Shown here piece by piece: positions 16,889 to 38,932 of a DNA stretch of 64,000 bases (position 1 is the stretch's first letter; every line of letters starts with the position of its first letter). The stretch is taken from positions 62,001 to 126,000 of IMG/VR virus record IMGVR_UViG_3300047445_000186. The stretch is one strand, 5' to 3'. The notes beneath the pieces are model-generated. The model worked only from the letters and a program-made list of their open reading frames with translations. It was not told the DNA's origin and ran no database searches. The translations under genes were made by a program, and so were the position numbers.

Positions 16889-16889
16889 A

Positions 16890-19329: not shown

Positions 19330-19371
19330 TTCCTGGATTCAGTTGCGAGGCTGAGCAACTAGAATCTAGAG

Positions 19372-20623: not shown

Positions 20624-20675
20624 CGCCGTTACAATCGTTACAGATTGGACCTGCAGGATGTAGTACAATTCATCC

Positions 20676-23215: not shown

Positions 23216-23228
23216 TACAATACGGGCT

Positions 23229-23980: not shown

Positions 23981-24049
23981 TCCAAATCTGCACCCCCTGA
24001 TCTTTCCTTGTCCGCGTACAATGAGGTACGCAATAAACAAGGAAAGAAA

Positions 24050-25321
24050 ATGGTTGCAGAACTCAAAGAACACGTCAACAAGCGCTCGCTTGTCACAGCC
24101 CGTACAATCGACGGTCTGTTCCCAATTGAAGGCGCTGACGCAATCGAAGTAGCGCAAGTCGATGGCTGGAAAGTCGTCGTGAAGAAGGGCGAGTTCAACG
24201 TGAACGACCCCTGCCTGTACTTCGAAATCGACAGCTTCCTGCCTGAAGGAAATCCCGCTTGGCAGTTCCTCGTGGACAAGCAACCGAAGGTGTTCAACGG
24301 CGTGCGTGGTCACAAGCTCAGAACGATCAAGCTCCGCGGTCAGATCAGCCAAGGGTTCGTAGTTCCGTACAAGGCGTTCCCAATCGTTGTCGCGGCCGTG
24401 ACGAACGACACGACGTTCCCAGTCCCTGAAGAACTGCGCGCTGAGTTCGACAATCTCGTGTTCGGTATGCACGAGCACGAAGCTCAGCTCGACGCTCGAG
24501 ACATGGACTTCAGCGATCTGCTTGGCGTGACGAAGTGGGAAGTCCAGCTTGCGGCGAATCTGCAAGGTCAAGCCGAAGGTCTGTTCCCGTCGTTCATCCA
24601 GAAGACGGACCAAGAGCGTTGCCAGAATCTGAAGAACGAAATCTTTGGGTACGAGGACCTCGTGATTCCGGCTAATGAGCACCGTCCAGAAATCGTTCGG
24701 AGGGCCCTGGCGTCGCCTGATGACGCGTACGAGATCACGGTCAAGCTTGATGGCTCGTCGATGACGGCGTTCGGTCGTGGCGTCATTGAGCAGGACGGCG
24801 AACAGTCGCACCTGAACATCGATGTCGGCGTATGCTCGCGTAACCTGCAGCTCAAGGTCAACGAAGCGAACGCAGAAAACTCGTTCATCAAAACGTCGAC
24901 AGACTCTGGATTGCTGCAAGCGATCATGTTCTACGTGCGTGAAACTGGTGAATCGATTGCCGTTCAAGGTGAGCTCATGGGCCCGAACATCCAAGGCAAC
25001 CGTGAACAACTCACGAAGGCGGCGTTCTATCTGTTCGACGTGTACCTCATCAATGAGGGTCGGTACGCCACGCCGATCGAGCGCGGTGAAGTGTTCCGCA
25101 GGCTCGTCGAGCTTGGTGCGAAGATCGAGCACACGCCGATCAAGCACGCGAAGACAACGCTCATTGAGCTCGGCCTGAAGACGATCGACGATCTGTTGAA
25201 GTTCGCTGAAGGTCCGTCGATCAAGCACCCGATCCGCGAAGGTCTCGTGTTCAAGCGACTGGACGGCAAGTTCAGCTTCAAGGCGATCTCGAACAAGTAC
25301 CTCGAAAAAGAGAAGGACTGA
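24050..25321 (+). CDS. RNA ligase, Rnl2/DRB0094-like with N-terminal OB domain
   Basis: IEGADAIE...GWKVVVKKGEF...YFEIDSFLP...LRGQISQG N-domain; VKLDGSS, QGELMGP, FYLFDV, REGLVFK, FKAISNKYL. Confidence 0.92.
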   Translation: MVAELKEHVNKRSLVTARTIDGLFPIEGADAIEVAQVDGWKVVVKKGEFNVNDPCLYFEIDSFLPEGNPAWQFLVDKQPKVFNGVRGHKLRTIKLRGQISQGFVVPYKAFPIVVAAVTNDTTFPVPEELRAEFDNLVFGMHEHEAQLDARDMDFSDLLGVTKWEVQLAANLQGQAEGLFPSFIQKTDQERCQNLKNEIFGYEDLVIPANEHRPEIVRRALASPDDAYEITVKLDGSSMTAFGRGVIEQDGEQSHLNIDVGVCSRNLQLKVNEANAENSFIKTSTDSGLLQAIMFYVRETGESIAVQGELMGPNIQGNREQLTKAAFYLFDVYLINEGRYATPIERGEVFRRLVELGAKIEHTPIKHAKTTLIELGLKTIDDLLKFAEGPSIKHPIREGLVFKRLDGKFSFKAISNKYLEKEKD

Positions 25322-26564: not shown

Positions 26565-27719
26565 ATGAATCTGACTCTGATTTGGTTCTTGGTCTTGCCG
26601 ATCATCGGCGGCGCCACGATCTGGCACTTCAATCGAAACACGAGCGCTGGGGTTTTCCTCGCGCCGATCGCTTTCGTCCCTGGCGCGATCCTGATCGGTC
26701 TCGTGTTCCTGATCTCGTACGGCTCGGCCGTGATCGACACAGAGATTTGGAGCGGCCAGGTCGTTTCGAAGACTCGAAAACACGACACGTACGAGGAATC
26801 GTACGAGTGCAATTGCAAGAACGTCTCGCGAACAGTGGGCTCTGGCAAGGATGCTCGGACCGTGACCGATCGCGTTTGCGACACGTGCTACCGAACGCAC
26901 TACACCGTGGACTGGGATTGCCAGACGACCGTTGGCTCGTTCCGGATCGACCGCAAGGACAGCACATGGCGCTCAGTGTACGACTCGGCAGATCCTGCGC
27001 GGTACACGTCAATCCAGAAGGGTGACCCTGCGGCGAAGACAGCGAAGTACACGAACTACGTGCAAGCCGTACCGAACTCTCTGTTTGCTGCAGTTGGAGA
27101 GACCACAAAGGCGCGATTCGCTGGAAAGCTCCCCGCGTATCCAGATCAGATCTACGACTTCTACCGAATCAATCGGTTCCTGTCCCCTGGGTTCTCGTTC
27201 CTCGACGCTGGAAAGTGGAACGAAGACATCTCGAACATCCTTCGTGATCTCGGCCCGGCAAAGCAGGTGAATGTGATCGTGGTTGTCGCGAAGACGGACG
27301 ATCGAGCGTACACCGCTGCACTGCGTGATCACTGGGAAGGCGCGAACAAGAACGACGTTGTGCTCGTGATTGGCTCCCTCGACGGCACGAAGATCGAGTT
27401 CGCCGAGGTCATGAGCTGGACGAAGAGCGAGATCTTCAAGATTGAGCTGCAAGACCGAGTGCAAGACATTGGCGTGATCGAGCGGAATCAGATCATGAGC
27501 GCCGTGCAACAGCAGATCGTGAAGAACTTCCAACGTCGCCATATGCGAGAGTTCGAGTACCTGAAGGGCGCGATTGATCCGCCGATGTGGCTCCTTGTCA
27601 CCCTGTTGATCACGCTCGTCGCTGGTTATGGTATTGCTGCAGCAGCCCTGACGGGTGCTCTCGATCGCTTCAGTGGTCGCAATCGCCGTGGAATTTACGG
27701 TCGCCGAGTTTTTCGTTAG
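26565..27719 (+). CDS. membrane protein with large periplasmic domain
   Basis: Two N-terminal TMs, CxC...CxxC, a C-terminal TM and a basic tail; ends TAG. Confidence 0.88.
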   Translation: MNLTLIWFLVLPIIGGATIWHFNRNTSAGVFLAPIAFVPGAILIGLVFLISYGSAVIDTEIWSGQVVSKTRKHDTYEESYECNCKNVSRTVGSGKDARTVTDRVCDTCYRTHYTVDWDCQTTVGSFRIDRKDSTWRSVYDSADPARYTSIQKGDPAAKTAKYTNYVQAVPNSLFAAVGETTKARFAGKLPAYPDQIYDFYRINRFLSPGFSFLDAGKWNEDISNILRDLGPAKQVNVIVVVAKTDDRAYTAALRDHWEGANKNDVVLVIGSLDGTKIEFAEVMSWTKSEIFKIELQDRVQDIGVIERNQIMSAVQQQIVKNFQRRHMREFEYLKGAIDPPMWLLVTLLITLVAGYGIAAAALTGALDRFSGRNRRGIYGRRVFR

Positions 27720-27725
27720 GACATC

Positions 27726-27983
27726 ATGTTTCGCTTTCTGTTCAATTGCTTTCGCAAGACGCCCGTGACCCCGCTCGCTGAAGACCAAGCGACCCTCGAA
27801 GGACTGGAGAAGATCGTGCACGACTTCGGTATGCGAGTTCACGAGTACATCACGCACCCTCTTGCCGACAAGGTCCAAGCTCGCAAACTCGAGGATGTGC
27901 TGCAGTACCACGAGGAACTTGTTCACTGCGCTCGCGCGAACATCTCAACCCGAAAACTCTGGAACACACTCGGCTACAACTGA
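27726..27983 (+). CDS. hypothetical protein
   Basis: AGGA SD. Confidence 0.7.
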   Translation: MFRFLFNCFRKTPVTPLAEDQATLEGLEKIVHDFGMRVHEYITHPLADKVQARKLEDVLQYHEELVHCARANISTRKLWNTLGYN

Positions 27984-28024
27984 GCTAGAATTCAACTCTC
28001 ATCAAACCACTGGAGAAGATCATC

Positions 28025-28612
28025 ATGAAGAAACAAGTTGGAATGGCTCTGTCGAGCCTCCTGGTCCTGATCGGCACGATCGCCCTGATCGCGCTGCTCG
28101 TGATCCCCTCGTACATCTCGGCCGCGAACTACGGGAACAAGGTCGAGAACACGCTGAACGCGAAGATCGAAGACAACGAGAACATCTACGCCCAAGGCAC
28201 CCAAGCGGTCATGGAAATCGCGCAGGTTCCGACGATGATGAAGAACGATCTTCTCGAGCTCGTGAAAGCCGAAATCCAGGGGAAGTACGGCAAGGACGGC
28301 TCGCAAGCTACCGTGCAGTTCCTTCGTGATCGCAATATCCCAATCGACGCCTCGATGTACAAGGCGATCCAACAGCAGATCCTCGCGTTCCGGAACAAGT
28401 TCGAAGTCGCTCAACGTGAAATGCTCGATCAGCGGAACACGTACCAAATCGCGCTCGGCACCGTCTGGCAAGGCATGTGGCTGAAGTTCGCCGGCTATCC
28501 GAAGATCGATCTGAAGAAGTTCACGATCGTGACGACCGAAAAGGCTCGTGCAACGTTCGAAACGAAGCGTGACAGCGGCATCAATCTCGGTGGCCTTCGC
28601 CCCGCTCAGTAA
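28025..28612 (+). CDS. membrane-anchored helical protein (LemA-like, tentative)
   Basis: TAGAATTCA promoter 27986; N-terminal TM then YISAANYGN and amphipathic helices ending ...FAGYP. Confidence 0.8.
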   Translation: MKKQVGMALSSLLVLIGTIALIALLVIPSYISAANYGNKVENTLNAKIEDNENIYAQGTQAVMEIAQVPTMMKNDLLELVKAEIQGKYGKDGSQATVQFLRDRNIPIDASMYKAIQQQILAFRNKFEVAQREMLDQRNTYQIALGTVWQGMWLKFAGYPKIDLKKFTIVTTEKARATFETKRDSGINLGGLRPAQ

Positions 28613-28623
28613 GGACTACGGCC

Positions 28624-29274
28624 ATGTGGAAGACTCTCAAGAATCTCGTCGTTGAAGACGACTCCAGCGGCCAGTCCGCTGCTCCGAAGACCACGACGAC
28701 CGCAGCCACCCCGCTCGGTCACGCAGCTCCGGCCTCGACCGCAGTTGCAGCAGACAACAAGTTCGTTCAAGCACTGCGCGGTGCAATCAAGAACCGCGCC
28801 ACAGCGTTCACCTCGCTGCTCGCAGCCGCAGACAAGCTCGTGACGATCATCCCCGATCCCACGACTCGACTGAAGGCCGCGTTCGCGACGGTTGCTGGCG
28901 AAGGTCGCGGCGTGAAGGAAGTTCTGGGCGCTCTCGAGATCCATGCGTCTGACTTGGAGGGACAACGCCTGCAGTTCCAACGTGCGGCCGAGGAGGCCAA
29001 GAACATCGCTGTTGGTGGACTCCAAAGGGAGCTCGACACGATTCAACCGAGTGTCGCTGGTGCACAAAGCCAGATCACCTCGATGCAGACGCAGATTCAG
29101 TCTCTGAACGAGCTGATCGCGCAGAAGTCAGCACGTGGTGCTGAGCTCACGGCGCAGATCTCGACCGAGAACCAACGTCTCACGACGTCGCAGCAAGAAT
29201 TCGAAACCGCGCTCACGATCGTGAAGAGCGAGCTGGATGGCCAGAAGGCGATCATCCTGACCGCACTGTCCTAA
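28624..29274 (+). CDS. coiled-coil protein
   Basis: Long heptad-rich C-terminal half. Confidence 0.85.
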   Translation: MWKTLKNLVVEDDSSGQSAAPKTTTTAATPLGHAAPASTAVAADNKFVQALRGAIKNRATAFTSLLAAADKLVTIIPDPTTRLKAAFATVAGEGRGVKEVLGALEIHASDLEGQRLQFQRAAEEAKNIAVGGLQRELDTIQPSVAGAQSQITSMQTQIQSLNELIAQKSARGAELTAQISTENQRLTTSQQEFETALTIVKSELDGQKAIILTALS

Positions 29275-29297
29275 TCAACGAAACTGGAAAGAAAAAG

Positions 29298-30314
29298 ATG
29301 GAAGATTCCGCAAAGACCAAGTCGTTCTGGGCCCGACCTGAAGGCACCACGGGTATGCTTGCGCTGGCAGCCGCCGGTGTTGGTCTGTACATCGCAGCTC
29401 CCGCGCTCCTCGGCTTCATGACGATGCTCACGGCCCTGCTCGGCCAAACGATCGCGGCAGTCTCGCTCGCTGCAGTGCTCGGCGCTCTGCTGTTCATCAT
29501 CAGCGACAAGAAGTTCCGCACCCTCGGCGCGTACATGTTCAAGAGCGTGATGCGCAAGATCACTGGCGTTTTCGTCGAGATCGATCCAATTGGGATCATG
29601 AAGTCGTACATCGAGTCGCTGATTGGCAAGCGCGAAGTGATGGAAGTCTCGCGTGACAAGCTCAGCGGGCAGATCACGGTCTTGAAGAAGCAGATCAATC
29701 AGAACTCGTCTGAGTACGACAAGTCGATGTCGATGGCCGCGCTTGCTCACCAGAAGGGGAACAACTCGGTGTTCAGCGTACAAAGCCGCCAAGCTGGCCG
29801 TCTCGAGAAGCTGAACAGGGACTCGCTCGGCCCACTGCTCTTGCAGATGGAAGTGCACCTTCGCGCAATCAACAAGTACCACGAAGTCACTGGCACTGTG
29901 ATTGACGACTTGAAGAACGAAGTCTCGGCCCGCAAGATCGAACGCGACATGATCTTGGCTTCGCATACGGCAATGAAGGCAGCCAAGCGAATCCTGAACG
30001 GTGGCGGCGATGCGAAGGAGCTGTTCGATCAAGCGATGGAATTCGTGGTTGAAGACTTCGGCATGAAGATGGGCGAGATCGATAGCTTCATCGAGAACTC
30101 GAAGGGCTTCGTCGAAGGTCTGGACATGCAGAACGGTGTGTACGAAGCCGATGCGCTGAAGAAGCTCCAAGCCTGGGAGAACAAGGCCGACAGCATCCTG
30201 CTCGGGAACTCGAAGGCCCAGCTCCTGGACAGCTCGACCCTGACGAGCTCGCTGAATGTGAACATCGGTGTGCCGGCTGCGACGGTCGTCGATTACTCGA
30301 AGCTGATCAAGTGA
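29298..30314 (+). CDS. membrane-anchored PspA/ESCRT-III-like coiled-coil protein
   Basis: Two TMs then VEIDPIGIMKSYIESL and long helices, resembling the PspA DP-x-x-I-L motif. Confidence 0.7.
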   Translation: MEDSAKTKSFWARPEGTTGMLALAAAGVGLYIAAPALLGFMTMLTALLGQTIAAVSLAAVLGALLFIISDKKFRTLGAYMFKSVMRKITGVFVEIDPIGIMKSYIESLIGKREVMEVSRDKLSGQITVLKKQINQNSSEYDKSMSMAALAHQKGNNSVFSVQSRQAGRLEKLNRDSLGPLLLQMEVHLRAINKYHEVTGTVIDDLKNEVSARKIERDMILASHTAMKAAKRILNGGGDAKELFDQAMEFVVEDFGMKMGEIDSFIENSKGFVEGLDMQNGVYEADALKKLQAWENKADSILLGNSKAQLLDSSTLTSSLNVNIGVPAATVVDYSKLIK

Positions 30315-30391
30315 TCAACCTGGGCGAGCTCTGACACAAAAGTGCTCGCCCAGAATAGAATTCACTTCTCATCAAACCCCTGGAAAAAAGA

Positions 30392-32116
30392 ATGAAACTC
30401 AAAGTTGTTCCGAAGATGCTGCTCATCGGCCTCGTGGTCGGTGGTGCTTACTTCGGTATCCAAGCTGCGCTGAACAGCGGCTACCTGAAGCCGAAGGCCA
30501 CGGTCGCGGTCTCGGTTCCCGACAAGATCGACTTCGGCACCGCCGCTCCGGTCGTCATTCCCGCCGCAACGAGCGCGATCACCGCCTCGGCGAGCACGAA
30601 GGAAACGATCCGCATCAAGTCCATTCCCTGGAACGGCACCACTGGTCTGCAGTACGCGAAGGCCGCTGGTCTGTTCAAGCAACGCGGTCTGAACGTCGAT
30701 GTGCAACGTGAAGACGACTACGCGAAGCTGATCGCCGACATGGCATCGTTCGCGAAGGATCCGAACACCGGTTCGCACTTCACGATCATCATGGGCGATG
30801 GTCTCCCAGCGTACATCATCGGCCTGAACGAAGCACTGAAGCCGTTCAACCAGTCCGCAGCGATGATCGCCGGCATCGGGTACTCGCGTGGTGAAGACAA
30901 GTGCATCATCGACGGGAACGCTGATCCTCGCGGTTCCCTGATCGCTGGCTACCTCGGCGATGGCGACATCAACATCTGCATCAAGTACGCGGCCGACAAC
31001 GGTATCCCCGTGAACTCCGATCCGAAGACGTTCGATCCGAACGCGATGAACTTCCTCGGCACCGGCTCTTTCGTCGAAGCTGACGAAAAGTTCATCGCCA
31101 GCGCGAAGTCGAACTACACGTCGGGCGGTTCCTGCGAAGATCGCAAGGTCGTTGGCGGCGGTACCAAGAAGGTCTGCGTGAACGGCACCGCCACTTGGAC
31201 TCCTGGTGATACCAAGGTCTTCGGTGAACTGAAGAAGCTCGGGAAGTCGATCAAGGTCATCGGTTCCACGAAGGAATACGCCTGGCAAATGCCGACTGCT
31301 GTGATCGGCAACAAGCAGTGGATGGCCAAGAACCCCGAAGTCGTGAAGGCCATGCTTGCAGCGATCTTCGAAGGTGGTGAAAAGGTTCGCTCGAACAGCG
31401 ACGCCCTGATGATCGCCGCAGCTGAACAAGCTCGAGTGAACAACGAAGGTGATGCAGCGTACTGGAGCACGATGTTCAAGGGTACCACTGAAGTCGGCCC
31501 GAACGGCAAGGCGATCAGCCTCGGTGGTTCCACGACGAATGGTGTGTCTGACGCAGCCTTCCTGTTCGGTCTGAACGGCAACGACAATCTGTACAAGAAG
31601 GTCTACACGGTGTACGGCAATATCGCAGTGAAGTACTTCCCTGATGTGATGCCTGGTGGTCTGGTTCCTTACGAGCAAGCTGTCGACAGTTCGTACGTTC
31701 AAGCTCTCCTCGGTCAGTCGACGAACGTAGCTCCTGCTGCCGTGCCGACCTACACCGCTGGTACCGAAACGTTCGCATCGAAGTCGTACGCAATCGAGTT
31801 CGAAACTGGCAAGGCAACGTTCACGCCGAAGGCTGTCGCTGTTCTGAATGACCTGCTCGATCAAGCTGCTGTGACGTCGCTCTCCGTGCAGATCAATGGC
31901 CACACCGACAACGTCGGCAATCCAGCCACGAACCTCTCGCTGAGCAAGGCACGAGCTGACTCGGTGAAGAACTTCCTGTCGCAGAACGCGCCGAAGAACT
32001 TCCCTGACGAACGAGTCGTTGCACGAGGTTTCGGCGATACGCAGCCAGCCGCCGATAACGCGACTCCCGCTGGCAAAGCGAAGAACCGCCGAGTCGAAGT
32101 GATCTTGAAGAAGTAA
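30392..32116 (+). CDS. NMT1/THI5-like substrate-binding domain fused to OmpA-like peptidoglycan-binding domain
   Basis: N-terminal anchor; PWNG...GLNVDV...GYSRGEDK periplasmic binding fold; C-terminal INGHTDNVG...NLSLSKARA...GFGDTQP...NRRVEV. Confidence 0.9.
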   Translation: MKLKVVPKMLLIGLVVGGAYFGIQAALNSGYLKPKATVAVSVPDKIDFGTAAPVVIPAATSAITASASTKETIRIKSIPWNGTTGLQYAKAAGLFKQRGLNVDVQREDDYAKLIADMASFAKDPNTGSHFTIIMGDGLPAYIIGLNEALKPFNQSAAMIAGIGYSRGEDKCIIDGNADPRGSLIAGYLGDGDINICIKYAADNGIPVNSDPKTFDPNAMNFLGTGSFVEADEKFIASAKSNYTSGGSCEDRKVVGGGTKKVCVNGTATWTPGDTKVFGELKKLGKSIKVIGSTKEYAWQMPTAVIGNKQWMAKNPEVVKAMLAAIFEGGEKVRSNSDALMIAAAEQARVNNEGDAAYWSTMFKGTTEVGPNGKAISLGGSTTNGVSDAAFLFGLNGNDNLYKKVYTVYGNIAVKYFPDVMPGGLVPYEQAVDSSYVQALLGQSTNVAPAAVPTYTAGTETFASKSYAIEFETGKATFTPKAVAVLNDLLDQAAVTSLSVQINGHTDNVGNPATNLSLSKARADSVKNFLSQNAPKNFPDERVVARGFGDTQPAADNATPAGKAKNRRVEVILKK

Positions 32117-32134
32117 TCCTTCATTCCTGATCCC

Positions 32135-32165
32135 AAGGGCAGAGTCGAAAGGCTCTGCCCTTTCT
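32135..32165. terminator. bidirectional terminator
   Basis: AAGGGCAGAG-TCGAAAGG-CTCTGCCCTTTTC. Confidence 0.75.
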
Positions 32166-32569
32166 TACTTGTACTTGTCAGCACTCAGATCGTGTGCGAT
32201 CACGCTGACCTTCACGGTGCCTTGCTTTGAAATGATCGCGTGCTCTGCGCGATGATGACCATCGAACAGGTGCACCAAACCATCAGGGGTCTTGATCCCT
32301 GTTGGCGCTCCAGGTGATGCAGATTTCGGAGTCCACGAATCAGCAATCCAGTCCTGCGTTGCTCGCAGATTCTGAACTGGAATCTCTTCCAATGAGAAGT
32401 CAGCTCGCTTGTGATCGAACACGATTCGACCAACGTGCTCGTACGTGAACTTCGACATCGGAATCGTGATCTTGCGATGCGGAAACCCGAGCTCACCGTT
32501 CTCGTCATCGAAGTCCTCGTCCTCGTAGTCTTCGTCGTCCTCGACCTGATGAATCTCATGCAGCTTCAT
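32165..32569 (-). CDS. ParB/sulfiredoxin-like domain protein with MKLHEI N-terminus
   Basis: IPVQNLRATQ and LFDGHHRA motifs; minus-strand TAAATA 32601-32606. Confidence 0.75.
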   Translation of the reverse strand: MKLHEIHQVEDDEDYEDEDFDDENGELGFPHRKITIPMSKFTYEHVGRIVFDHKRADFSLEEIPVQNLRATQDWIADSWTPKSASPGAPTGIKTPDGLVHLFDGHHRAEHAIISKQGTVKVSVIAHDLSADKYK

Positions 32570-32587
32570 GGTACTAAAATTTCAGTT

Positions 32588-33373
32588 ATGATCTCAGCTC
32601 TATTTACTCCGTACGCCTTGGGCCGAAAGCTCTCGGTAAAGTTCCTGGCCGGTGTCTCTCTGGCGACACTGATGGTGTTCTGGGCACTCGCTCCAGCTTC
32701 GACAGGTATCCCTACACAGCTCTCGATCGTTCACTCCTGGAACACCCTGGCCCTCGAGCAAGGCCTTCTGCTTGAGCTGTTCCAGTCGACGATCGTGATT
32801 TGGAAAGCTCTGTTCCTAAGTGCATTCATCGCTGGTGGGATCGCAGCTCTAGTCACGGCCGACATCTTCAAGCCCGTTGGCACGTTCATCGCGTCGATGC
32901 GCTTCCTTGGTTTCGCTGGCTTGACGTTCCTGTTCACGATCTGGACGAGTGATGGGTCACAGTTGAAACTCGCGCTCCTCACGTTCGGCATGACGGTCTT
33001 TTTGACGCGCTCAACGATCGACATGGTCAAGAGCATTCCACAATCCGACATCGATTACGCGCGCTCGCTTGGTCTCAAGGGTTGGGGCTTGACATGGGAG
33101 CTCGTTGTTCGTGGCCGCTCCGCTGACATGCTCGACTTGGTTCGTCAGAACGCAGCCGTTGGGTGGACTCTGCTCTCCATGGTCGAAGGCCTGGTCAGAT
33201 CTGAAGGCGGGATCGGTGCTCTGCTCTTGAACCAGAACAAGTATTTCAATTTGAGTGCAGTGTTCGCGATTCAACTTACGATTCTAGGGTACGGCATCAT
33301 TCAAGACTTCGGTCTTAGCTACCTTCGTAGCGTGCTTTGTCCTTGGACCAAACTTAATCGGAGCGATAAGTGA
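32588..33373 (+). CDS. ABC transporter permease (NitT/TauT type)
   Basis: Six TM-like helices; EAA-loop IDYARSLGLKGWGLTWELVV; MVEGLVRSEGGIG. Confidence 0.9.
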   Translation: MISALFTPYALGRKLSVKFLAGVSLATLMVFWALAPASTGIPTQLSIVHSWNTLALEQGLLLELFQSTIVIWKALFLSAFIAGGIAALVTADIFKPVGTFIASMRFLGFAGLTFLFTIWTSDGSQLKLALLTFGMTVFLTRSTIDMVKSIPQSDIDYARSLGLKGWGLTWELVVRGRSADMLDLVRQNAAVGWTLLSMVEGLVRSEGGIGALLLNQNKYFNLSAVFAIQLTILGYGIIQDFGLSYLRSVLCPWTKLNRSDK

Positions 33374-33696
33374 CCAAACCATTCAGTCCCGCGGAAGCCC
33401 GCAAAGCCAAGCAACAATCGATCCCACCGGAAGTGATCGAGGTTGTGAACACCATCCTTGCTCGGGAATGCTCCCAATCTGGGTACGCAACCATGCTCGA
33501 GGAAGACGTGATCACTGCGATTCTCGAGGCGATCCCCGCCGCGACCCGCTCGCAAATCTACAAGGACCACTGGCTCGATTTCGAAGAAGCCTATCGTGCT
33601 CAAGGATGGAGCGTCGACTATGACGCGCCTGGGTACAACGAGAGCTACAAGGCGAGCTACACCTTCCGCCCGAAGCGTGGAGGTGACCGTGACTAA
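33370..33696 (+). CDS. hypothetical protein
   Basis: GTGA overlap; WLDFEEAYRAQGWSVDYDAPGYNESY. Confidence 0.8.
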   Translation: MTKPFSPAEARKAKQQSIPPEVIEVVNTILARECSQSGYATMLEEDVITAILEAIPAATRSQIYKDHWLDFEEAYRAQGWSVDYDAPGYNESYKASYTFRPKRGGDRD

Positions 33697-33901
33697 GCTC
33701 ATTCAAGTTTCCCTGTACACGAACGACAAGAACGATGGGACGGTGCTTCATCTCCCAGTGCTTCCTCCAGTTGGCGCATTCTTGAACTACGGTCAACGTG
33801 CGTACACCGTGATCCGCGTGATCTTCGATCTCGAGATCAGCGATCGGTACAGCGATGTGCGGAACACTACGAAGATCAAACTCCTGCTTGAAGAACGATG
33901 A
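33689..33901 (+). CDS. hypothetical protein
   Basis: GGAGG SD before GTG 33689. Confidence 0.65.
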   Translation: MTKLIQVSLYTNDKNDGTVLHLPVLPPVGAFLNYGQRAYTVIRVIFDLEISDRYSDVRNTTKIKLLLEER

Positions 33902-34689
33902 GCTACGAAAAGAAAGAGCGACTGCTCACGATCGAGAACGTGAACTTGCAGTACGGCGAGAAGGTCATTCTGCGCGATGTGAATCTGCACGTTGACAACA
34001 TTGTTCGGCCGGGGATGCAGCAAGGTCAAGTGGTCGCGCTGCTCGGTCTGTCGGGCTCTGGAAAGACTCAACTGTTCCGATGCATTGCAGGTCTCCAAGC
34101 TCCGACCGGTGGTGTCGTAAAGCTCATGAGCGACACTCAGGTGAAAGCGGGCGACGTCGGTGTGGTGCAACAAGCATACCCGCTTCTCAATCACCGGACG
34201 ATCTGGTCGAACCTGATGCTGGCTGCGCACGGCAAGAAGGAGAACAAGGAAAAGGCGGAGAGCCTCCTTGCGCACTTCAAGCTGAGCGACAAGAAGAACT
34301 CGTACCCACTCGAGCTCAGTGGTGGTCAACGACAGCGTGTGGCGATCATCCAACAGCTCCTGTGCTCATCGCACTTCTTGCTGATGGACGAACCGTTCAG
34401 CGGTCTCGATGTGATGGCGAAGCGGCGTGTGTTCGACACGATCAACACCGTAGCGACAACCGACGAGTTGAACACGGTGATCTTCACCACGCACGATCTG
34501 GAAGCAGCGGTCACTTTGGCCGACACGATCTGGATCATTGGCCACAAGGAAGGCGATCCTCCTGGCGCGACCGTGTTGAAGCAGCTCGATCTCGCGGCGA
34601 TCGGCCTGGCCTGGACGCCTGACATCCAGCGCCACCCTTTGTACTTCCAAACCGTACTCGAGCTGAAAGAGCTCTTCGCATCACTGTGA
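33898..34689 (+). CDS. ABC transporter ATP-binding protein
   Basis: GLSGSGKT Walker A, VVQQ Q-loop, LSGGQRQR signature, LLMDEPFSGLD Walker B/D-loop, TTHD H-loop. Confidence 0.96.
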   Translation: MSYEKKERLLTIENVNLQYGEKVILRDVNLHVDNIVRPGMQQGQVVALLGLSGSGKTQLFRCIAGLQAPTGGVVKLMSDTQVKAGDVGVVQQAYPLLNHRTIWSNLMLAAHGKKENKEKAESLLAHFKLSDKKNSYPLELSGGQRQRVAIIQQLLCSSHFLLMDEPFSGLDVMAKRRVFDTINTVATTDELNTVIFTTHDLEAAVTLADTIWIIGHKEGDPPGATVLKQLDLAAIGLAWTPDIQRHPLYFQTVLELKELFASL

Positions 34690-34782
34690 TTTGCAAGTGA
34701 ACCCGAATTCACTTTAGCCGTTCATGCTGAGTGCACGATAGAATTCACCTGTCAACAACATCATCTGACTGGAGTATTTCAA

Positions 34783-35079
34783 ATGGCACTCAAGCCCGTT
34801 CCCAAGCTCATCCTGATCGCCGTCATCGTTGGCGGTGTCGGCTACGGAGCCACGAAGTTCATGCCCGCTTCCGCTCCTGCTCAAGCAGCAGCACCGATCG
34901 AAGCACCCACTGTGGTTGCACCGCCCACTGCGCAAGTCCAAGAAGCACGCGCAGTTCCGGCTCCGGCCCCAGCACCTGTGAGCGAGCCCGTTCAGCAAGC
35001 GCCGGAACGCACCTTCCAAGCCGCTCCCGCGCAGAACGACGCCGGCATGAACGCCCTGCTCGGTCTGAAGAAGAAGTAA
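34783..35079 (+). CDS. membrane-anchored Pro/Ala-rich protein
   Basis: TAGAATTCAC promoter 34739; N-terminus MALKPVPKLILIAVIVGGVGYG parallels that of the OmpA fusion (MKLKVVPKMLLIGLVVGGAYFG). Confidence 0.8.
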   Translation: MALKPVPKLILIAVIVGGVGYGATKFMPASAPAQAAAPIEAPTVVAPPTAQVQEARAVPAPAPAPVSEPVQQAPERTFQAAPAQNDAGMNALLGLKKK

Positions 35080-35104
35080 ATCGATCATCAACTGGAGTAA
35101 CGAA

Positions 35105-36019
35105 ATGAACAAGAACTACCGCGGCTTCGCATTCGCCGCCTTGGCGCTGGCCTCTTGCGCTGCACTCGCAGCTCCCGTCGGGATCGCCTCTGGCCAACCC
35201 ACCGGCACGAACTACCCGATGGTCGAGGACATCAAGAAGGTCTGCTCGGCACCGGGCTCGCCGATCAACAACAACGTCAGCGACGGTTCGCTCGACAACC
35301 TGTTCAAGATTTACGGCGACAAGAACTCGCAGTACGCCGTGGTCCAAGCCGACGCGCTGGTCTACCAGCAAGGCCAGGACAAGAAGATGATGGACCGCAT
35401 TCTGACGGTCTTCCCGTTCTTCTCGACCGAGATCCACCTGGTCGCCAAGGACGGTTCCCCGATCAATTCCCTGGCCGATCTGCAGGGCAAGCGTGTGGTC
35501 GAAGGCCCTGAAGGTTCCGGCACCTGGGTCACGGTCCAAGTGATCAAGGCCCTGACCGGCGTGACGTGGCAGCCATTCTTCGCGTCCCAACAAGACGGCT
35601 TCAATGCCGTGATGAGCAACCAAGCTGACGCCGAGTTCATCGTCGCTGGCAAGCCGATCGGCATGCTCACGAAGGCGAGCGGCTTCAAGCTCGTGCCGCT
35701 CAAGAATCCGAAGCTCGACGAGTTCAAGCTGTACACGAAGACGATGATCTCGACCGGCTCGTACGCCTCGCAGAAGACCGCGGTGCAGACGTACAAGGTC
35801 GACAATGTGCTCGCAACGTACGCGTTCAAGAACCAGTACCAGAAGGAAATCGGCGATCTGGTCACGTGCATCACGAAGAACATCGGCCGCCTGCAGACCG
35901 AGCCTGGCTTCCACGAGAAGTGGAAGGACGTCGATCCTCTCGACATCCAGCGCATCGACTGGCCCACGCACCCCGCCGCGCTGAGCGCCATTCAACGTGA
36001 AGCGAAGGCACGCAAGTGA
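35105..36019 (+). CDS. TAXI-family TRAP solute-binding receptor
   Basis: Signal peptide; IASGQPTGTNY, SDGSLDNL, AVVQADAL, STEIHLVA, INSLADLQGKRVVEGPEGSGT. Confidence 0.88.
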   Translation: MNKNYRGFAFAALALASCAALAAPVGIASGQPTGTNYPMVEDIKKVCSAPGSPINNNVSDGSLDNLFKIYGDKNSQYAVVQADALVYQQGQDKKMMDRILTVFPFFSTEIHLVAKDGSPINSLADLQGKRVVEGPEGSGTWVTVQVIKALTGVTWQPFFASQQDGFNAVMSNQADAEFIVAGKPIGMLTKASGFKLVPLKNPKLDEFKLYTKTMISTGSYASQKTAVQTYKVDNVLATYAFKNQYQKEIGDLVTCITKNIGRLQTEPGFHEKWKDVDPLDIQRIDWPTHPAALSAIQREAKARK

Positions 36020-36336
36020 TCGATCACAACCCAGACCATCTGGATTTCGCGATCACGCCAGAGCGACAGGCCATTCGACAATTCCTGTCGAAGCCCGCAC
36101 CAATGCCTCAAGCCTGCGGTTGCATGGGGCCGCAGGCGATCGACGGAAGTTCCTGGGACCCCAGCTCTGGCACGAAATACGAGGACATCAAGCGGTACCC
36201 TTCCTGTCCTTGCGCGATGCAGTGGCATGAAGAAATCGACGGTCAGTTCTACGTGATCGACGAGAACAGATCACCTGATGGGATCACGCACACGGCCACT
36301 CTGGTCGGACCGGTCGGAGGACCGTACAAGAAGTAA
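36016..36336 (+). CDS. Cys-containing hypothetical protein
   Basis: GTGA overlap; ACGCMGP...CPCAM. Confidence 0.75.
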   Translation: MIDHNPDHLDFAITPERQAIRQFLSKPAPMPQACGCMGPQAIDGSSWDPSSGTKYEDIKRYPSCPCAMQWHEEIDGQFYVIDENRSPDGITHTATLVGPVGGPYKK

Positions 36337-37762: not shown

Positions 37763-38932
37763 ATGGCATCGAAAACAGACGTCACCGTCTACATCGGAAG
37801 GTTCACGCCTTTCCACTTGGGTCACGCGCATGTTCTGCGCCAAGCCCTGAACAACTCCAAGCTCGTCATCGTTCTGCTCGGTTCGGCTTATCTGGCGCGA
37901 TCACTGAAGAACCCCTTCACGTTCATCGAACGTCGCAGGATCATCGAAAGCTGGGTCTCGGCCGAGATCATGGCCGGCACGATTCCGCACGACGCCGAAA
38001 TCCACTTCGCTCCGCTCCGCGACTTCACGTACAACAACGCTCTCTGGATCCGCAATGTCCAGGAGAAGGTGAAGACGATCGTTCGCGATGTGGCACTCCG
38101 TACGAATCAAATCCTGACCGACATCCGTGTCACTGGTTCGGATCGCGATGAATCGACCTGGTACCTGAACGCGTTCCCGCAATGGAAGAAGGCGCTGGTC
38201 GAAACGTTCCGTCACGACGGTACCGGCGATCTGAGTGCGACCGAAGTTCGTGAACTCCTGTTCTCCGGCCGGGCCATGGAGCCGGGCGTTGCTGAACGCC
38301 TGATCGCGATGCTCCCACGTACGACCTATGAATGGCTAGTCAAGTTCGCCGACTCACCAGAACACTTCCGGTTGGCACGGTGGTACGAACAGAACAGAGC
38401 CTATAAGGAAGCCTGGTCGGTTGCACCGTACGCCCCGATCTTCACCACGGTCGATGCCGTGATCGTTCAGTCCGGTCACATTCTCGTCGTCGAGCGCGGA
38501 GCTGAACCGGGCATGGGGCTCTGGGCTCTGCCTGGCGGATTCCTGAACACGAATGAACGGCTGCGTGATGGCGTTGTCCGTGAAGTTCTGGAAGAAACTG
38601 GGCTGCGCCTCGCTGACGGCAAGAAGGCGAAGGAGATCACGGAAGACATTCTGAAGAATTGCATTCGTGAACAGGAAGTGTTCGACGCTCCTGATCGCTC
38701 GATGCGTGGTCGAACCATCACGCACGCGTTCTTCATTCGTCTCGATGACACGAAGCCGCTCCCCAAGGTGAAGGGACAGAACGCGCCACTGCACGAAACT
38801 GGTGGTGTCGCCGAAGTCGAGACTGCGAAGGCGTTCTGGCTGCCAATCAACGAAGCTCTGAGCCGCTCGGAGATGTGGTTCGAAGATCACCACGCAATCA
38901 TCGAGACGATGATTGGCGGAAAGGACCTGTAA
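37763..38932 (+). CDS. nadM: bifunctional NMN adenylyltransferase / ADP-ribose pyrophosphatase (NadM-NUDIX)
   Basis: IGRFTPFHLGH (HxGH), SLKNPFT, SATEVR; Nudix box LPGGFLNTNERLRDGVVREVLEETGL; FEDHH. Confidence 0.95.
   Translation: MASKTDVTVYIGRFTPFHLGHAHVLRQALNNSKLVIVLLGSAYLARSLKNPFTFIERRRIIESWVSAEIMAGTIPHDAEIHFAPLRDFTYNNALWIRNVQEKVKTIVRDVALRTNQILTDIRVTGSDRDESTWYLNAFPQWKKALVETFRHDGTGDLSATEVRELLFSGRAMEPGVAERLIAMLPRTTYEWLVKFADSPEHFRLARWYEQNRAYKEAWSVAPYAPIFTTVDAVIVQSGHILVVERGAEPGMGLWALPGGFLNTNERLRDGVVREVLEETGLRLADGKKAKEITEDILKNCIREQEVFDAPDRSMRGRTITHAFFIRLDDTKPLPKVKGQNAPLHETGGVAEVETAKAFWLPINEALSRSEMWFEDHHAIIETMIGGKDL

What the first reader, a model, noticed from the sequence alone, without database searches (positions are those of the whole stretch)
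26565..36019. Phage-borne envelope module: complete ABC transporter set, OmpA-anchored binding protein, PspA-like and TAXI proteins
Seen: about 9.5 kb of co-oriented genes encode a periplasmic-domain membrane protein, a LemA-like protein, a coiled-coil protein, a PspA-like membrane protein, a substrate-binding-OmpA fusion, an ABC permease, an ABC ATPase, a second protein with a near-identical membrane anchor, and a TAXI receptor. They are driven by phage-type promoters (27986, 30356, 34739) and interleaved with phage hypotheticals, so this is domesticated rather than a fresh host insertion. Established: phages rarely carry all three ABC components. Inference: nutrient or NAD-precursor import, envelope-stress protection during long infection, or superinfection exclusion. 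The NMT1/THI5-type binding fold and the adjacent NAD salvage genes make a pyrimidine/pyridine precursor a testable guess.
Basis: partly seen in the sequence, partly recalled or inferred. Interest (0 to 1): 0.64.

Follow-up and report, generated by a model that had tools for sequence, protein, structure and literature searches.

The report
Jumbo phage carries bacterial PspA-ABC envelope operon
A 332-kb soil jumbo phage carries a complete ABC importer, with a cell-wall-tethered binding protein and a PspA-like membrane protein, that it captured as a whole five-gene operon from Burkholderiales-type bacteria; the gene set is real and under selection, but this kind of operon is already described and what it transports is unknown.

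Summary
The stretch is a composite of three units.

(A) A 3-TM protein (g384) and a LemA-like protein (g195). This pair is also adjacent in CBA120 and Burkholderia phage FLC9.

(B) A five-gene core:
- coiled-coil g216;
- g338, a 2-TM protein with a PspA/ESCRT-III-like hairpin;
- g574, a membrane-anchored NitT/TauT-type binding protein fused to an OmpA-like peptidoglycan-binding domain;
- a permease;
- an ATPase.

This core is a bacterial operon. It lies in the same order in Burkholderiales, Serratia, Hymenobacter, Longimicrobium and other genomes, and was described by comparative genomics (Ravi et al. 2024) but never characterised. The phage copies nest inside the Burkholderiales branch. Another huge-phage lineage captured it separately.

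(C) An anchor-only protein (g98) plus an orphan TAXI binding protein, specific to this phage clade.

Phage-side rewiring consists of three copies of a bipartite promoter-like motif (7 in the genome, 0.18 expected), two small genes wedged between permease and ATPase, and one antisense ParB-like ORF.

The NAD/pyrimidine-precursor guess has no support, and the substrate is unknown. A 2026 preprint already reports complete ABC transporters beside PspA in huge phages. Verdict: new member of a known kind, moderate interest.

The parts
26565..27719 (+). g384: membrane protein, 2 N-terminal and 1 C-terminal hydrophobic segments, with a Cys-rich middle domain predicted to be periplasmic; phrog_2087 (unit A)
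   Evidence: phrog_2087 at E 2e-86. tblastn hits in 502 phage records, including T4-like Aeromonas phages, Kuttervirus and FLC9. No Pfam or PDB sequence match. Hydropathy.
27726..27983 (+). g85: small hypothetical ORF
   Evidence: ORF only. Matched only in the identical locus L002, not in relatives L003-L008.
27947..27991 (+). Bipartite promoter-like motif, copy 1 (AACCCG, about 30 nt, TAGAAT), 34 nt upstream of g195
   Evidence: 7 copies in the genome, all on the + strand, against 0.18 expected. An equivalent motif lies upstream of the g195 homologues in L003 and L004.
28025..28612 (+). g195: LemA-like single-pass membrane protein (phrog_1383, annotated 'virion structural protein') (unit A)
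   Evidence: phrog_1383 at E 1e-50. ESM Atlas viral 'LemA family' clusters, score 0.96, TM 0.89. 34-37% identical to CBA120 orf254 and FLC9 gp159, each lying next to the g384 homologue. Pfam LemA not reached.
28624..29274 (+). g216: soluble coiled-coil protein, first gene of the five-gene cassette (unit B)
   Evidence: Only generic coiled-coil matches. Homologues sit in the same position in phage and bacterial loci.
29298..30314 (+). g338: N-terminal FW.RPEG motif, 2-TM hairpin, DP motif, then a PspA/Vipp1/ESCRT-III-like helical hairpin (unit B)
   Evidence: AF2 hairpin, residues 97-234, pLDDT about 90. Top Foldseek hits are Vipp1, PspA, CHMP and Snf7. Top VIA hit is E. coli PspA 4whe, Z 12.3, rmsd 2.1 over 121 aa. 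PF04012 matches weakly in 5 of 25 homologues. The architecture is conserved in bacteria and in L001/L008.
30317..30361 (+). Bipartite promoter-like motif, copy 2, with a hairpin in the spacer, 31 nt upstream of g574
30392..32116 (+). g574: TM anchor (about residues 8-28), linker, NitT/TauT-type substrate-binding domain (about 65-465) and OmpA-like peptidoglycan-binding domain (470-566) (unit B)
   Evidence: OmpA at 66.4 bits, NMT1 at 22.4 bits. AF2 pLDDT 91. Foldseek hits TauA, CmpA, SsuA, NrtA and ThiY at E 1e-13 to 1e-10. About 80 positions are at least 95% identical across 92 phage and bacterial homologues, including the TD..N..LS..RA and NRRV motifs.
32135..32162 (+). Intrinsic-terminator-like hairpin (12-bp stem, 7 GC pairs, T-rich tail) just after g574
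   Evidence: Comparable hairpins follow the gene in L003, L004, L005 and L006.
32165..32569 (-). Antisense 134-aa ORF with an acidic N-terminus and a DGHHR motif (ParB/Srx-like?); an insertion specific to this strain, not part of the system
   Evidence: Translation. Absent from L003-L008. Present in identical contigs of runs X4 and X5. No Pfam or PADLOC match.
32588..33373 (+). ABC permease, 261 aa (TauC/SsuC-like, BPD_transp_1) (unit B)
   Evidence: BPD_transp_1 at 22.7 bits, below the 26.4 cut-off. NCBIfam TauC at E 2.7e-6. 64-87% identical in phage relatives and 37-60% in bacteria, aligned from residue 1.
33370..33696 (+). g108: phage-only small gene whose start overlaps the permease stop
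   Evidence: Homologues in L003, L004 and L021 only; absent from bacterial operons, where permease and ATPase genes abut.
33689..33901 (+). g70: second small phage-only gene; its stop overlaps the ATPase start
   Evidence: Weak homologues in L003 and L004.
33898..34689 (+). ABC ATPase, 263 aa, with intact Walker A, Q-loop, LSGGQ signature, Walker B and H-loop (unit B)
   Evidence: ABC_tran at 92.4 bits. Best NCBIfam matches are PhnT2, CysA, SaoA, SsuB and TauB. Motifs read.
34700..34744 (+). Bipartite promoter-like motif, copy 3, upstream of g98
   Evidence: Conserved upstream of the L003 homologue.
34783..35079 (+). g98: anchor-only protein, with a TM anchor resembling that of g574, a Pro/Ala-rich linker and a conserved C-terminal DAG(L/M)xxxLG motif (unit C)
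   Evidence: Homologues lie directly upstream of TAXI in L003, L004 and L005.
35105..36019 (+). TAXI-family binding protein with a Sec signal peptide, predicted to be soluble and periplasmic; no TRAP membrane subunit in the genome (unit C)
   Evidence: TIGR02122 at 100.5 bits (cut-off 84.35) and NMT1_3 at 73 bits. PDB matches 1us4 and 8s4j at E 1e-10. DctM absent. The Cys in the signal peptide is not conserved. Absent from bacterial operons and from L001/L008.

Best explanation
The 9.5-kb stretch is a composite envelope module of a Burkholderiales-type jumbo myovirus.

Shown:
- Its core is a five-gene bacterial operon captured whole. The genes are coiled-coil g216; g338, membrane-anchored and PspA/ESCRT-III-like; g574, a membrane-anchored NitT/TauT-type binding protein fused to an OmpA-like peptidoglycan-binding domain; a type-I importer permease; and an ABC ATPase.
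- In the phage the operon has been rewired. It sits behind phage-specific promoter-like motifs. Two small phage genes are translationally coupled between permease and ATPase.
- A widespread phage pair (g384 and LemA-like g195) lies upstream. A clade-specific pair (anchor-only g98 and an orphan TAXI binding protein) lies downstream.

Inferred mechanism:
- During the long infection, g574 is held in the periplasm between the inner membrane (N-terminal helix) and the cell wall (OmpA-like domain).
- There it captures a small solute and delivers it to a permease2-ATPase2 importer.
- On the cytoplasmic face, g338, possibly with g216, forms ESCRT-III-like assemblies anchored by its TM hairpin. These stabilise or remodel the inner membrane around the transporter.
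- The LemA-like pair adds a second membrane-organising function.
- TAXI, perhaps tethered through g98, whose anchor resembles that of g574, supplies a second ligand specificity, either to the phage permease or to a host TRAP transporter.

The solute is unknown. The net role is to keep the host envelope energised and supplied until lysis.
For: Gene identities:
- Family and profile scans.
- Binding domain: AF2 pLDDT 91; top fold hits are TauA, CmpA, SsuA, NrtA and ThiY.
- g338: top fold hits are Vipp1, PspA and ESCRT-III in two independent searches.
- g195: LemA-like.

Bacterial operon:
- 195 relatives of the binding domain in genome contigs. The best 80 were kept as loci. Nearly all that are long enough show the same order, g216-g338-g574-permease-ATPase, and only these five genes are conserved across taxa.
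- The flanks are chromosomal: RNase R, Rrf2, AraC and PEBP in Serratia microhaemolytica; DnaJ, DUF885 and HipA in a Massilia-like MAG.

Origin:
- The 19 phage sequences form one clade (SH-aLRT 100). It nests in the Burkholderiales branch, sister to a Massilia-like pair.
- The nearest cultured phage by portal protein is Ralstonia phage RsoM2USA, 49% identity.
- The source samples are rhizosphere metagenomes.
- Holding the window clade and L008 together as one clade is rejected (AU p 1.6e-25).

Selection:
- 50-87% identity with intact frames across the phage clade.
- About 80 positions of g574 are at least 95% identical across phage and bacterial copies.
- The ATPase motifs are intact.

Phage rewiring.

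Literature:
- The same operon type is described in PMC11237479, which proposes a link between membrane remodelling and solute transport.
- Complete ABC systems lie next to 15 huge-phage pspA genes (bioRxiv 10.64898/2026.10.24.761521).
- LemA proteins remodel membranes and interact with PspA (bioRxiv 10.64898/2026.10.21.759321).
Against: - No expression data: no RNA run holds the sequence.
- No ligand can be inferred; identity to solved binding proteins is 12-13%.
- The PspA assignment is at fold level only. Pfam PF04012 is not reached on the window protein. Other long helical hairpins score Z about 11, against 12.3 for PspA.
- The permease is below Pfam's cut-off.
- Physical coupling of g338 or g216 to the transporter is inferred from conserved gene order alone.
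- The antisense ParB-like insertion sits between the g574 terminator and the permease gene. No promoter for the permease-ATPase genes was identified, so in this particular strain their expression could be impaired.
- The TAXI-permease docking prediction gave no verdict.
Confidence: 0.6

Rival explanations
1. Pure nutrient-acquisition auxiliary metabolic genes. The ABC system and TAXI import a pyridine or pyrimidine precursor (nicotinamide, NR, HMP) or an N or S source for nucleotide and NAD synthesis. The PspA-like and LemA-like genes are unrelated neighbours.
For: - A complete importer set with intact motifs.
- The fold class includes ThiY and THI5 as well as TauA, SsuA, NrtA and CmpA.
- NMNAT-Nudix (37763-38932) and NAMPT (42831-44342) lie 1.7-7 kb downstream. 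NMNAT stays near the module in L003 and L005-L007.
Against: - g216 and g338 travel with the transporter genes across at least 6 bacterial phyla and three phage lineages, so they are not chance neighbours.
- No NAD or thiamine genes are conserved beside the bacterial operons or beside the L008 and L001 copies.
- The NAD genes are collinear with the whole region in this clade, so adjacency carries little information.
- 12-13% identity gives no substrate signal.
- Own knowledge: NAMPT plus NMNAT in phages is better explained as NAD+ reconstitution against NAD-depleting defences.
Confidence: 0.15
2. An envelope-sensing, superinfection-exclusion or defence-like system. The wall-tethered, membrane-anchored g574 and the coiled-coil membrane protein g338 sense perturbation of the envelope by an incoming phage, by analogy with ZorB/ZorA, and block secondary infection. 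The ABC ATPase powers the response rather than nutrient uptake.
For: - Patchy, rare distribution in bacteria: 1 of 301 sampled genomes of the order, that one being the centre genome itself.
- Accessory-type flanks: IS66 in Serratia; HipA and SIR2 in L048.
- Carried by phages, with repeated transfer between phages and bacteria.
- The OmpA-like domain matches ZorB models at domain level.
Against: - No PADLOC model matches beyond generic OmpA and ABC domains.
- The permease is of the type-I importer family, and the binding-domain pocket region is very strongly conserved, which fits solute binding.
- No nuclease or other effector gene is conserved in the operon.
Confidence: 0.12
3. Assembly artefact, host contamination or decaying passenger DNA. 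The region would be a chimeric join of host and phage DNA, or a recent non-functional insertion.
For: - The core has clear bacterial relatives.
- One antisense insertion interrupts the operon.
Against: - Identical contigs from other rhizosphere runs bridge every junction, and no joints were found.
- The same order is kept in at least 5 related viral contigs at 50-87% identity and on many 315-383 kb contigs.
- GC content is uniform with the rest of the genome.
- Phage promoter motifs and phage genes are interleaved with the operon.
- All frames are intact.
Confidence: 0.03

Closest known systems
Bacterial PspA/Snf7-with-TM + ABC ATPase + permease + PBPb-OmpA operons (Ravi et al., mSystems 2024, PMC11237479, section on AAA+ associations; example OGG56892.1)
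   Same: The same parts are present: an ESCRT-III-superfamily protein with a TM segment, a further coiled-coil protein, an ABC ATPase, a permease, and a fused solute-binding and peptidoglycan-binding (OmpA) protein. Homologous five-gene operons were recovered here from Burkholderiales, Serratia, Hymenobacter, Longimicrobium, Myxococcota, Acidobacteriota and CPR MAGs.
   Different: - The phage copy has no AAA+ ATPase nearby.
- It is driven by phage-type promoter motifs.
- It has two phage-only genes between permease and ATPase.
- It is joined to a LemA-like pair and a TAXI pair.
- I could not fetch the paper's example protein to align it, so equivalence rests on the matching description and on CPR homologues L051 and L069.
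Huge-phage pspA loci next to complete ABC transporters (Yuan & Chen, bioRxiv 10.64898/2026.10.24.761521)
   Same: Huge phages encode PspA beside a substrate-binding protein, a permease and an ATP-binding protein (15 of 189 loci). TPM-domain and 2-TM binding-protein neighbours are also noted. Soil phages are included.
   Different: - That survey required PF04012 or structural annotation as PspA, and gives no anatomy of this cassette.
- The OmpA fusion, the bacterial operon origin, the independent captures, the TAXI/g98 pair and the promoter motif are not described there.
- Whether this phage clade is among their 15 loci is unknown.
E. coli TauABC / SsuABC and cyanobacterial NrtABCD / CmpABCD (NitT/TauT-family ABC importers)
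   Same: - The binding-domain fold matches: Foldseek E 2e-13 for TauA 6ssy, then CmpA, SsuA and NrtA.
- The permease matches TauC/SsuC profiles and the ATPase matches SsuB/TauB/CysA profiles.
   Different: - Only 12-13% identity.
- The binding protein is membrane-anchored and wall-tethered rather than free or lipid-anchored.
- The permease is below Pfam threshold.
- The substrate is unknown.
PspA-PspBC and LiaI-LiaH membrane-stress systems
   Same: An ESCRT-III-fold protein acts at the inner membrane. In LiaIH a small membrane protein anchors the PspA homologue.
   Different: In g338 the anchor (a 2-TM hairpin) is fused to the PspA-like part and replaces the amphipathic helix alpha-0. No PspB, PspC, PspF or LiaFSR genes are present.
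TAXI-TRAP transporters (e.g. Thermus TT1099 1us4; PDB 8s4j)
   Same: g304 passes TIGR02122 and NMT1_3 thresholds and matches solved TAXI proteins.
   Different: No DctQ/M membrane subunit was found in the phage genome. The TAXI proteins of candidate host-lineage genomes are only 25-27% identical.
Cyanophage PstS (own knowledge: a phage-encoded binding protein that feeds the host PstCAB importer)
   Same: A phage supplies a periplasmic binding protein to boost uptake during infection. This is a possible model for the orphan TAXI.
   Different: Here the phage also brings its own permease and ATPase.

Membership tests
Type-I ABC importer, NitT/TauT family | Substrate-binding protein with the class-II periplasmic-binding fold of the NMT1/SsuA/TauA group | tested here: met
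   AF2 model pLDDT 91. Foldseek hits TauA, CmpA, SsuA, NrtA and ThiY at E 2e-13 to 1e-10, TM by target 0.57-0.76. Pfam NMT1 at 22.4 bits, cut-off 20.5.
Type-I ABC importer, NitT/TauT family | Permease of the BPD_transp_1 family with an EAA-type coupling loop | tested here: inconclusive
   PF00528 at 22.7 bits, below the 26.4 cut-off. NCBIfam TauC at E 2.7e-6, far below its cut-off. A diverged EAA-like segment (DYARSLG...) is visible and conserved.
Type-I ABC importer, NitT/TauT family | ABC ATPase with Walker A, Q-loop, LSGGQ, Walker B and H-loop | tested here: met
   PF00005 at 92.4 bits. All motifs read in the translation.
Type-I ABC importer, NitT/TauT family | Demonstrated binding-protein-dependent uptake of a defined solute | not testable with these tools
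   Needs a ligand screen and a transport assay.
PspA/Vipp1/ESCRT-III superfamily (g338) | Sequence membership (Pfam PF04012 or Snf7 above threshold) | tested here: not met
   No PF04012 hit on the window protein. Weak hits (best E 0.0028) in 5 of 25 homologues. CHMP3 at E 0.9-4 in a profile search of PDB sequences.
PspA/Vipp1/ESCRT-III superfamily (g338) | Long alpha1-alpha2/3 helical hairpin followed by shorter helices, superposable on PspA/Vipp1 | tested here: inconclusive
   Vipp1, PspA, CHMP and Snf7 fill the top 25 Foldseek hits, best E 5e-4. The top VIA hit is PspA 4whe at Z 12.3, rmsd 2.1 A over 121 aa, but unrelated hairpins reach Z about 11.
PspA/Vipp1/ESCRT-III superfamily (g338) | N-terminal amphipathic helix alpha-0 for peripheral membrane binding | tested here: not met
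   Replaced by a conserved 2-TM hairpin preceded by an FW.RPEG motif.
LemA family (g195) | Pfam PF04011 above threshold | tested here: not met
   No hit.
LemA family (g195) | About 190 aa, N-terminal TM helix, LemA-like helical fold | tested here: met
   TM segment at residues 3-37. ESM Atlas clusters named 'LemA family protein', feature score 0.96, structural TM 0.89. One neighbouring cluster carries PF04011 in 11% of members.
OmpA-like peptidoglycan-binding domain (C-terminus of g574) | Pfam PF00691 above threshold and the conserved D/R peptidoglycan-contact motifs | tested here: met
   66.4 bits against 27.2. T505-D506, N514, L517-S518, R521-A522 and N565-R566-R567-V568 are at least 95% conserved in 92 homologues. 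PDB matches at E 1e-15.
TAXI-TRAP transporter | TAXI-family binding protein | tested here: met
   TIGR02122 at 100.5 against 84.35; PF16868 at 73.1 against 27.
TAXI-TRAP transporter | Cognate DctQ/DctM membrane subunit encoded with it | tested here: not met
   PF06808 not found in the 331,776-bp genome at E up to 10. The genome is 94% complete by CheckV, so a small gap remains.
PspA/Snf7-ABC-PBPb/OmpA operon (Ravi et al. 2024) | Co-linear genes for a TM-bearing ESCRT-III-like protein, an ABC ATPase, a permease and a fused binding/OmpA protein | tested here: met
   The order is conserved in nearly all of the 80 bacterial loci long enough to show it, and in 7 phage loci.
PspA/Snf7-ABC-PBPb/OmpA operon (Ravi et al. 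2024) | Associated AAA+ ATPase (present in some described operons) | tested here: not met
   No gene beyond the five is conserved beside the bacterial cassettes, and none of the genes scanned in 26565-36336 matched an AAA+ family. No AAA+ family was searched for on its own.
Zorya (ZorAB) defence system | ZorA (MotA-like) plus ZorB, with ZorC/D or ZorE effectors | tested here: not met
   Only the OmpA-like domain matches ZorB models (E 5e-12). No ZorA, C, D or E match.

The most novel reading that the evidence does not exclude
The five genes build one envelope-spanning machine rather than a transporter with neighbours. A binding protein pinned between inner membrane and cell wall, its ABC importer, and an ESCRT-III-like polymer anchored beside it would couple solute uptake, or sensing of a wall-derived ligand, to local membrane remodelling or repair. 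Huge phages have captured this machine at least twice to keep the host envelope competent through a long infection. This clade has extended it with an anchor-only adaptor (g98) that docks a second, TAXI-type binding protein onto the same complex.
Probability: 0.2. Interest if true: 0.7.

Novelty: new member of a known kind. Interest (0 to 1): 0.42.

Why it matters
- The cassette is an experimentally untouched bacterial system that links an ESCRT-III-like protein to an ABC importer with a wall-tethered binding protein.
- Its repeated capture and long retention by jumbo phages argues that it does something useful to an infected cell. That gives a tractable entry point: a phage knockout, or the Serratia, Massilia or Undibacterium isolates that carry it.
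- It adds a concrete, anatomically resolved case to the emerging view that large phages manage the host envelope.
- It suggests a host lineage for an uncultured rhizosphere phage clade: Burkholderiales, perhaps Oxalobacteraceae.
- It does not overturn anything known, and the substrate and phenotype remain open.

Tried and rejected
- megablast of the 9.5 kb against GenBank phages: no match.
- tblastn of g574 against plasmids: no match.
- Sequence and profile searches of the binding domain, g338, g216 and g384 against PDB sequences: nothing specific.
- hhalign of the g338 family against the LR756500 368-aa protein: probability only 28%, aligned at the DP motif. Homology there rests on shared architecture and position.
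- hhalign of g216 against g338: no relation. Calling g216 a second PspA was therefore dropped.
- Pfam LemA, PspA_IM30, TPM_phosphatase and DctM searched in the whole genome: none found. My impression that the C-terminal part of g384 looks TPM-like stays an untested impression.
- Lipoprotein reading of TAXI (LASC lipobox): rejected. The Cys is not conserved, and homologues have AxA-AP signal-peptidase-I sites.
- PADLOC: only domain-level hits.
- Complex prediction of permease x2 with mature TAXI: 'no answer' (score 0.00, mark 0.32). This is not evidence either way.
- First tblastx check of the flanks was too noisy. It was repeated with length and score filters.
- Sequencing runs: no RNA holder, so no expression evidence.
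- Sampling 301 genomes of the order of Albitalea found the cassette only in the centre genome. The cassette is rare, but 'not found in those searched' is all that can be said.
- The large representative-protein search was not used, as the operators advised. The word search and genome scan had settled the question.

Full report
**1. What the contig is**

The window is bases 62001-126000 of a single 331,776-bp contig. IMG/VR holds it as a virus record, and CheckV rates it 94% complete. Large ORFs elsewhere on the contig match a portal protein, a tail sheath, ribonucleotide reductase, a family-B DNA polymerase and tail fibres. The nearest cultured phage by portal protein is Ralstonia phage RsoM2USA at 49% identity, followed by XacN1-type and Rak2-type jumbo phages. 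GC content is even across the region. The sequence occurs in rhizosphere metagenomes only, and no RNA run holds it.

Contigs assembled independently from other rhizosphere runs cover these junctions with no differences and no alternative joints:
- g574 to the antisense ORF;
- the antisense ORF to the permease;
- permease to g108 to ATPase;
- ATPase to g98.

The region is therefore phage DNA and not a chimera.

**2. Gene content**

- **g384** (26565-27719) has two N-terminal and one C-terminal hydrophobic segments. It belongs to phrog_2087.
- **g195** (28025-28612) is a single-pass membrane protein of phrog_1383.
  - Pfam LemA is not reached.
  - The ESM Atlas places it in viral clusters named 'LemA family' (feature score 0.96, structural TM 0.89).
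- **g216** (28624-29274) gives only coiled-coil matches.
- **g338** (29298-30314) has a 2-TM hairpin and then a long helical hairpin.
  - With an alignment of 25 homologues, AF2 models residues 97-234 at pLDDT about 90.
  - Foldseek's top 25 hits are Vipp1, PspA, CHMP1B, CHMP3 and Snf7.
  - An all-against-all structural search puts E. coli PspA 4whe first (Z 12.3, rmsd 2.1 A over 121 residues), only slightly above unrelated hairpins.
  - PF04012 appears weakly in 5 of 25 homologues.
- **g574** (30392-32116) has an N-terminal anchor, a binding domain and an OmpA-like domain at 66 bits.
  - The binding domain is modelled at pLDDT 91.
  - Its best structural matches are TauA, CmpA, SsuA, NrtA, ThiY and THI5, at 12-13% identity.
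- **The permease** is 261 aa, starting at 32588. Relatives align from its first residue. It matches TauC, SsuC and BPD_transp_1 below threshold.
- **The ATPase** (33898-34689) has all catalytic motifs.
- **g98** (34783-35079) is an anchor plus a Pro/Ala-rich tail.
- **g304** (35105-36019) passes the TAXI thresholds. It has a Sec signal peptide whose Cys is not conserved in homologues, so it is a soluble periplasmic protein.

- A 134-aa ORF with a DGHHR motif lies antisense at 32165-32569.
- The two anchors share 12 of 28 residues, so they are not near-identical.
- A 70-aa gene (33689-33901) lies between g108 and the ATPase gene.

**3. Regulatory signals**

It occurs 7 times in the genome, always on the + strand. 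A first-order Markov model expects 0.18 copies. Three copies lie here, upstream of g195, g574 and g98. Equivalent motifs stand before the same genes in L003 and L004.

The spacing is too long for a canonical sigma-70 promoter, so this is a phage-specific signal. Its function as a promoter is inferred.

A strong terminator-like hairpin follows g574, and relatives have one at the same place. This fits the usual excess of binding protein over membrane subunits.

Start and stop codons overlap along permease-g108 and g70-ATPase, which suggests translational coupling.

**4. The stretch is a composite**

*Unit A, g384 and g195.* These two genes are neighbours in Escherichia phage CBA120 (orf253/orf254) and Burkholderia phage FLC9 (gp160/gp159), at 31-37% identity. 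Those phages lack the transporter. Of 50,697 phage records, only LR756500.1 matches the ATPase at E below 1e-30.

*Unit B, g216-g338-g574-permease-ATPase.* This order is conserved in:
- related viral contigs L003-L007, at 50-87% identity (about 30% for g216 in L005-L007);
- the distant viral contig L008, at 36%;
- the 462-kb uncultured phage LR756500.1, for g574, permease and ATPase at 30-43%. There a 253-aa coiled-coil protein and a 368-aa 2-TM protein with the same DP motif lie upstream.

*Unit C, g98 and TAXI.* This pair occurs only in the window's clade. The genome has no TRAP membrane subunit.

*The antisense ORF.* It is absent from all relatives. It is present in the same strain in other samples.

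**5. Unit B is a bacterial operon**

A scan of one genome per species found 195 relatives of the binding domain. The best 80 were kept as loci. In nearly all that are long enough, the same five genes lie in the same order. The full-length fusion is present too: anchor, binding domain and OmpA domain.

Isolates carrying it include:
- Massilia glaciei;
- several Undibacterium strains;
- Caballeronia zhejiangensis;
- Albitalea terrae (on a 1.5-Mb contig);
- Scleromatobacter humisilvae;
- Serratia microhaemolytica;
- many Hymenobacter species;
- Fibrella aquatilis.

MAGs carrying it come from Longimicrobium, Myxococcota, Acidobacteriota, Armatimonadota and CPR bacteria.

Only these five genes are conserved between taxa. 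The flanks are ordinary chromosomal genes:
- RNase R, Rrf2, AraC, PEBP and an IS66 element in Serratia;
- DnaJ, DUF885, ankyrin, GNAT, HipA, SIR2 and VIT-VWA in the Massilia-like MAG L048.

Outside the cassette these contigs share nothing with the phage. The operon is rare: in a sample of 301 genomes of the order of Albitalea, only the centre genome had it.

Two short MAG contigs are fragments of this phage clade that were binned with bacteria:
- L020, labelled Pseudobdellovibrionaceae;
- L021, labelled Acinetobacter; its protein is WP_407306580.1.

**6. Origin**

I built a maximum-likelihood tree of 81 full-length g574 homologues.
- The 19 sequences of the window's phage clade form one group (SH-aLRT 100).
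- That group is sister to the Massilia-like pair L048/L049 (support 86).
- It sits inside the Burkholderiales branch (support 93-100). That branch in turn sits inside wider bacterial diversity.
- L008 groups with Longimicrobium (support 93).
- LR756500.1 lies on a long, unplaced branch.

Forcing the window clade and L008 into one clade costs 152 log-likelihood units (AU p 1.6e-25). I named that group after seeing the tree.

There were therefore at least two, probably three, transfers between bacteria and huge phages. The tree is unrooted, but the nesting favours a bacterium-to-phage direction. Three lines point to a Burkholderiales host: the Ralstonia-phage affinity of the portal protein, the rhizosphere source, and this nesting. 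That host assignment is an inference.

**7. Selection**

All frames are intact across the clade. About 80 positions of g574 are at least 95% identical across 92 phage and bacterial proteins. They include a set of Asp, Asn, Trp, Tyr, Thr and Gln residues in the binding domain and the peptidoglycan-contact motifs of the OmpA domain. The phage copy therefore most likely binds the same ligand and the same wall component as the bacterial ones. A DGD.NI...DN segment resembles a Ca2+ loop. The ligand cannot be named from these data.

**8. What is already known**

- Ravi et al. [quoted passage not shown] They propose a link between membrane remodelling and solute transport. No experiment exists.
- Yuan and Chen (bioRxiv 10.64898/2026.10.24.761521) report 189 pspA genes in huge phages. 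Fifteen of them lie next to complete ABC transporter systems.
- A 2026 preprint (10.64898/2026.10.21.759321) reports that LemA proteins remodel membranes and interact with PspA.

The finding is thus a well-resolved new member of a known kind. New here are:
- the operon-level match to bacteria;
- the independent captures;
- the phage rewiring;
- the g98/TAXI extension;
- the separate identity of the LemA pair.

**9. Mechanism (inferred)**

- g574 spans the periplasm from the inner membrane to the wall and feeds a permease2-ATPase2 importer.
- g338 forms ESCRT-III-like assemblies beside the importer, anchored by its hairpin in place of helix alpha-0, possibly with g216.
- The anchor motif of g574 (M.LKP.PK..LI...GG..YG) is conserved among proteobacterial and phage copies, and g98 repeats it. 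This suggests a specific docking site. g98 might bring TAXI to that site. The docking prediction for TAXI on the permease dimer gave no verdict.

Rival readings are scored in their own sections: nutrient import only, a defence-like envelope sensor, and an artefact.

**10. Limits**

- There is no expression evidence, no ligand and no interaction evidence.
- The PspA and LemA labels rest on fold and language-model evidence.
- The permease is below Pfam's threshold.
- In this strain the antisense insertion may affect permease and ATPase expression.
- The large representative-protein search was not used.

Noticed in passing
window 32165-32569 (minus strand): A 134-aa antisense ORF with an acidic N-terminus and a DGHHR motif (ParB/sulfiredoxin-like?) is inserted between the g574 terminator and the permease start, 18 nt from it. 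It is absent from all relatives but fixed in this strain in several samples. It may be a mobile or selfish insertion.
   Followed up: partly
window 37763-38932 and 42831-44342: A bifunctional NMN adenylyltransferase-Nudix protein and a NAMPT. This is the two-enzyme NAD+ salvage set that, from my own knowledge, phages use to counter NAD-depleting defences. NMNAT stays near the module in L003 and L005-L007.
   Followed up: partly
window 41556-42782: An adenylosuccinate-synthetase-like protein (PF00709, E 6e-34, 408 aa). It could be a PurA-type or a PurZ-type enzyme. PurZ would imply 2-aminoadenine DNA. This was not examined.
   Followed up: no
window 55019-61249 and 47754-48086: A cluster of 24 tRNA genes on the + strand, in the low-GC, high-GC-skew stretch at 54-60 kb, and an ARAGORN call of a permuted tmRNA with tag peptide ANSDSFRLVA.
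   Followed up: no
window 13064-25321: A nucleic-acid repair and ligation set: RlaP-like nucleotidyltransferase (13064-14146), ATP-dependent DNA ligase (17433-18854), metallophosphoesterase (19372-20175), a 592-aa protein with a PEP-utilising mobile domain (21437-23215), an HNH endonuclease (23432-23980) and an RNA ligase with the PHA02142 OB domain (24008-25321).
   Followed up: no
window 45499; G000:C1 171262, 178836, 214362: The other four copies of the bipartite motif AACC[CT]G, about 30 nt, TA[GT]AAT. All are on the + strand and intergenic, so they define a small regulon that could be timed by RNA-seq.
   Followed up: partly
L020 (JBHIVS010000199.1) and L021 (NZ_JAZQPV010000103.1): Contigs binned into a Pseudobdellovibrionaceae MAG and an Acinetobacter MAG (protein WP_407306580.1, 'OmpA family protein [Acinetobacter sp.]') are fragments of this jumbo-phage clade. 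They are 59-83% identical, and L020 includes phage-only genes. This is mis-binning that seeds wrong taxonomy in protein databases.
   Followed up: partly
L080 (Hymenobacter sp. BRD67 chromosome) 10467-11266; L089: The cassette's ATPase gene matches in two or three separate pieces, which suggests frameshifts or decay of the operon in some Hymenobacter genomes.
   Followed up: no
L008 14867-16486: In the distant phage contig, a GroEL-type chaperonin gene (Cpn60_TCP1, E 8e-75) lies 1.4 kb downstream of the cassette.
   Followed up: no
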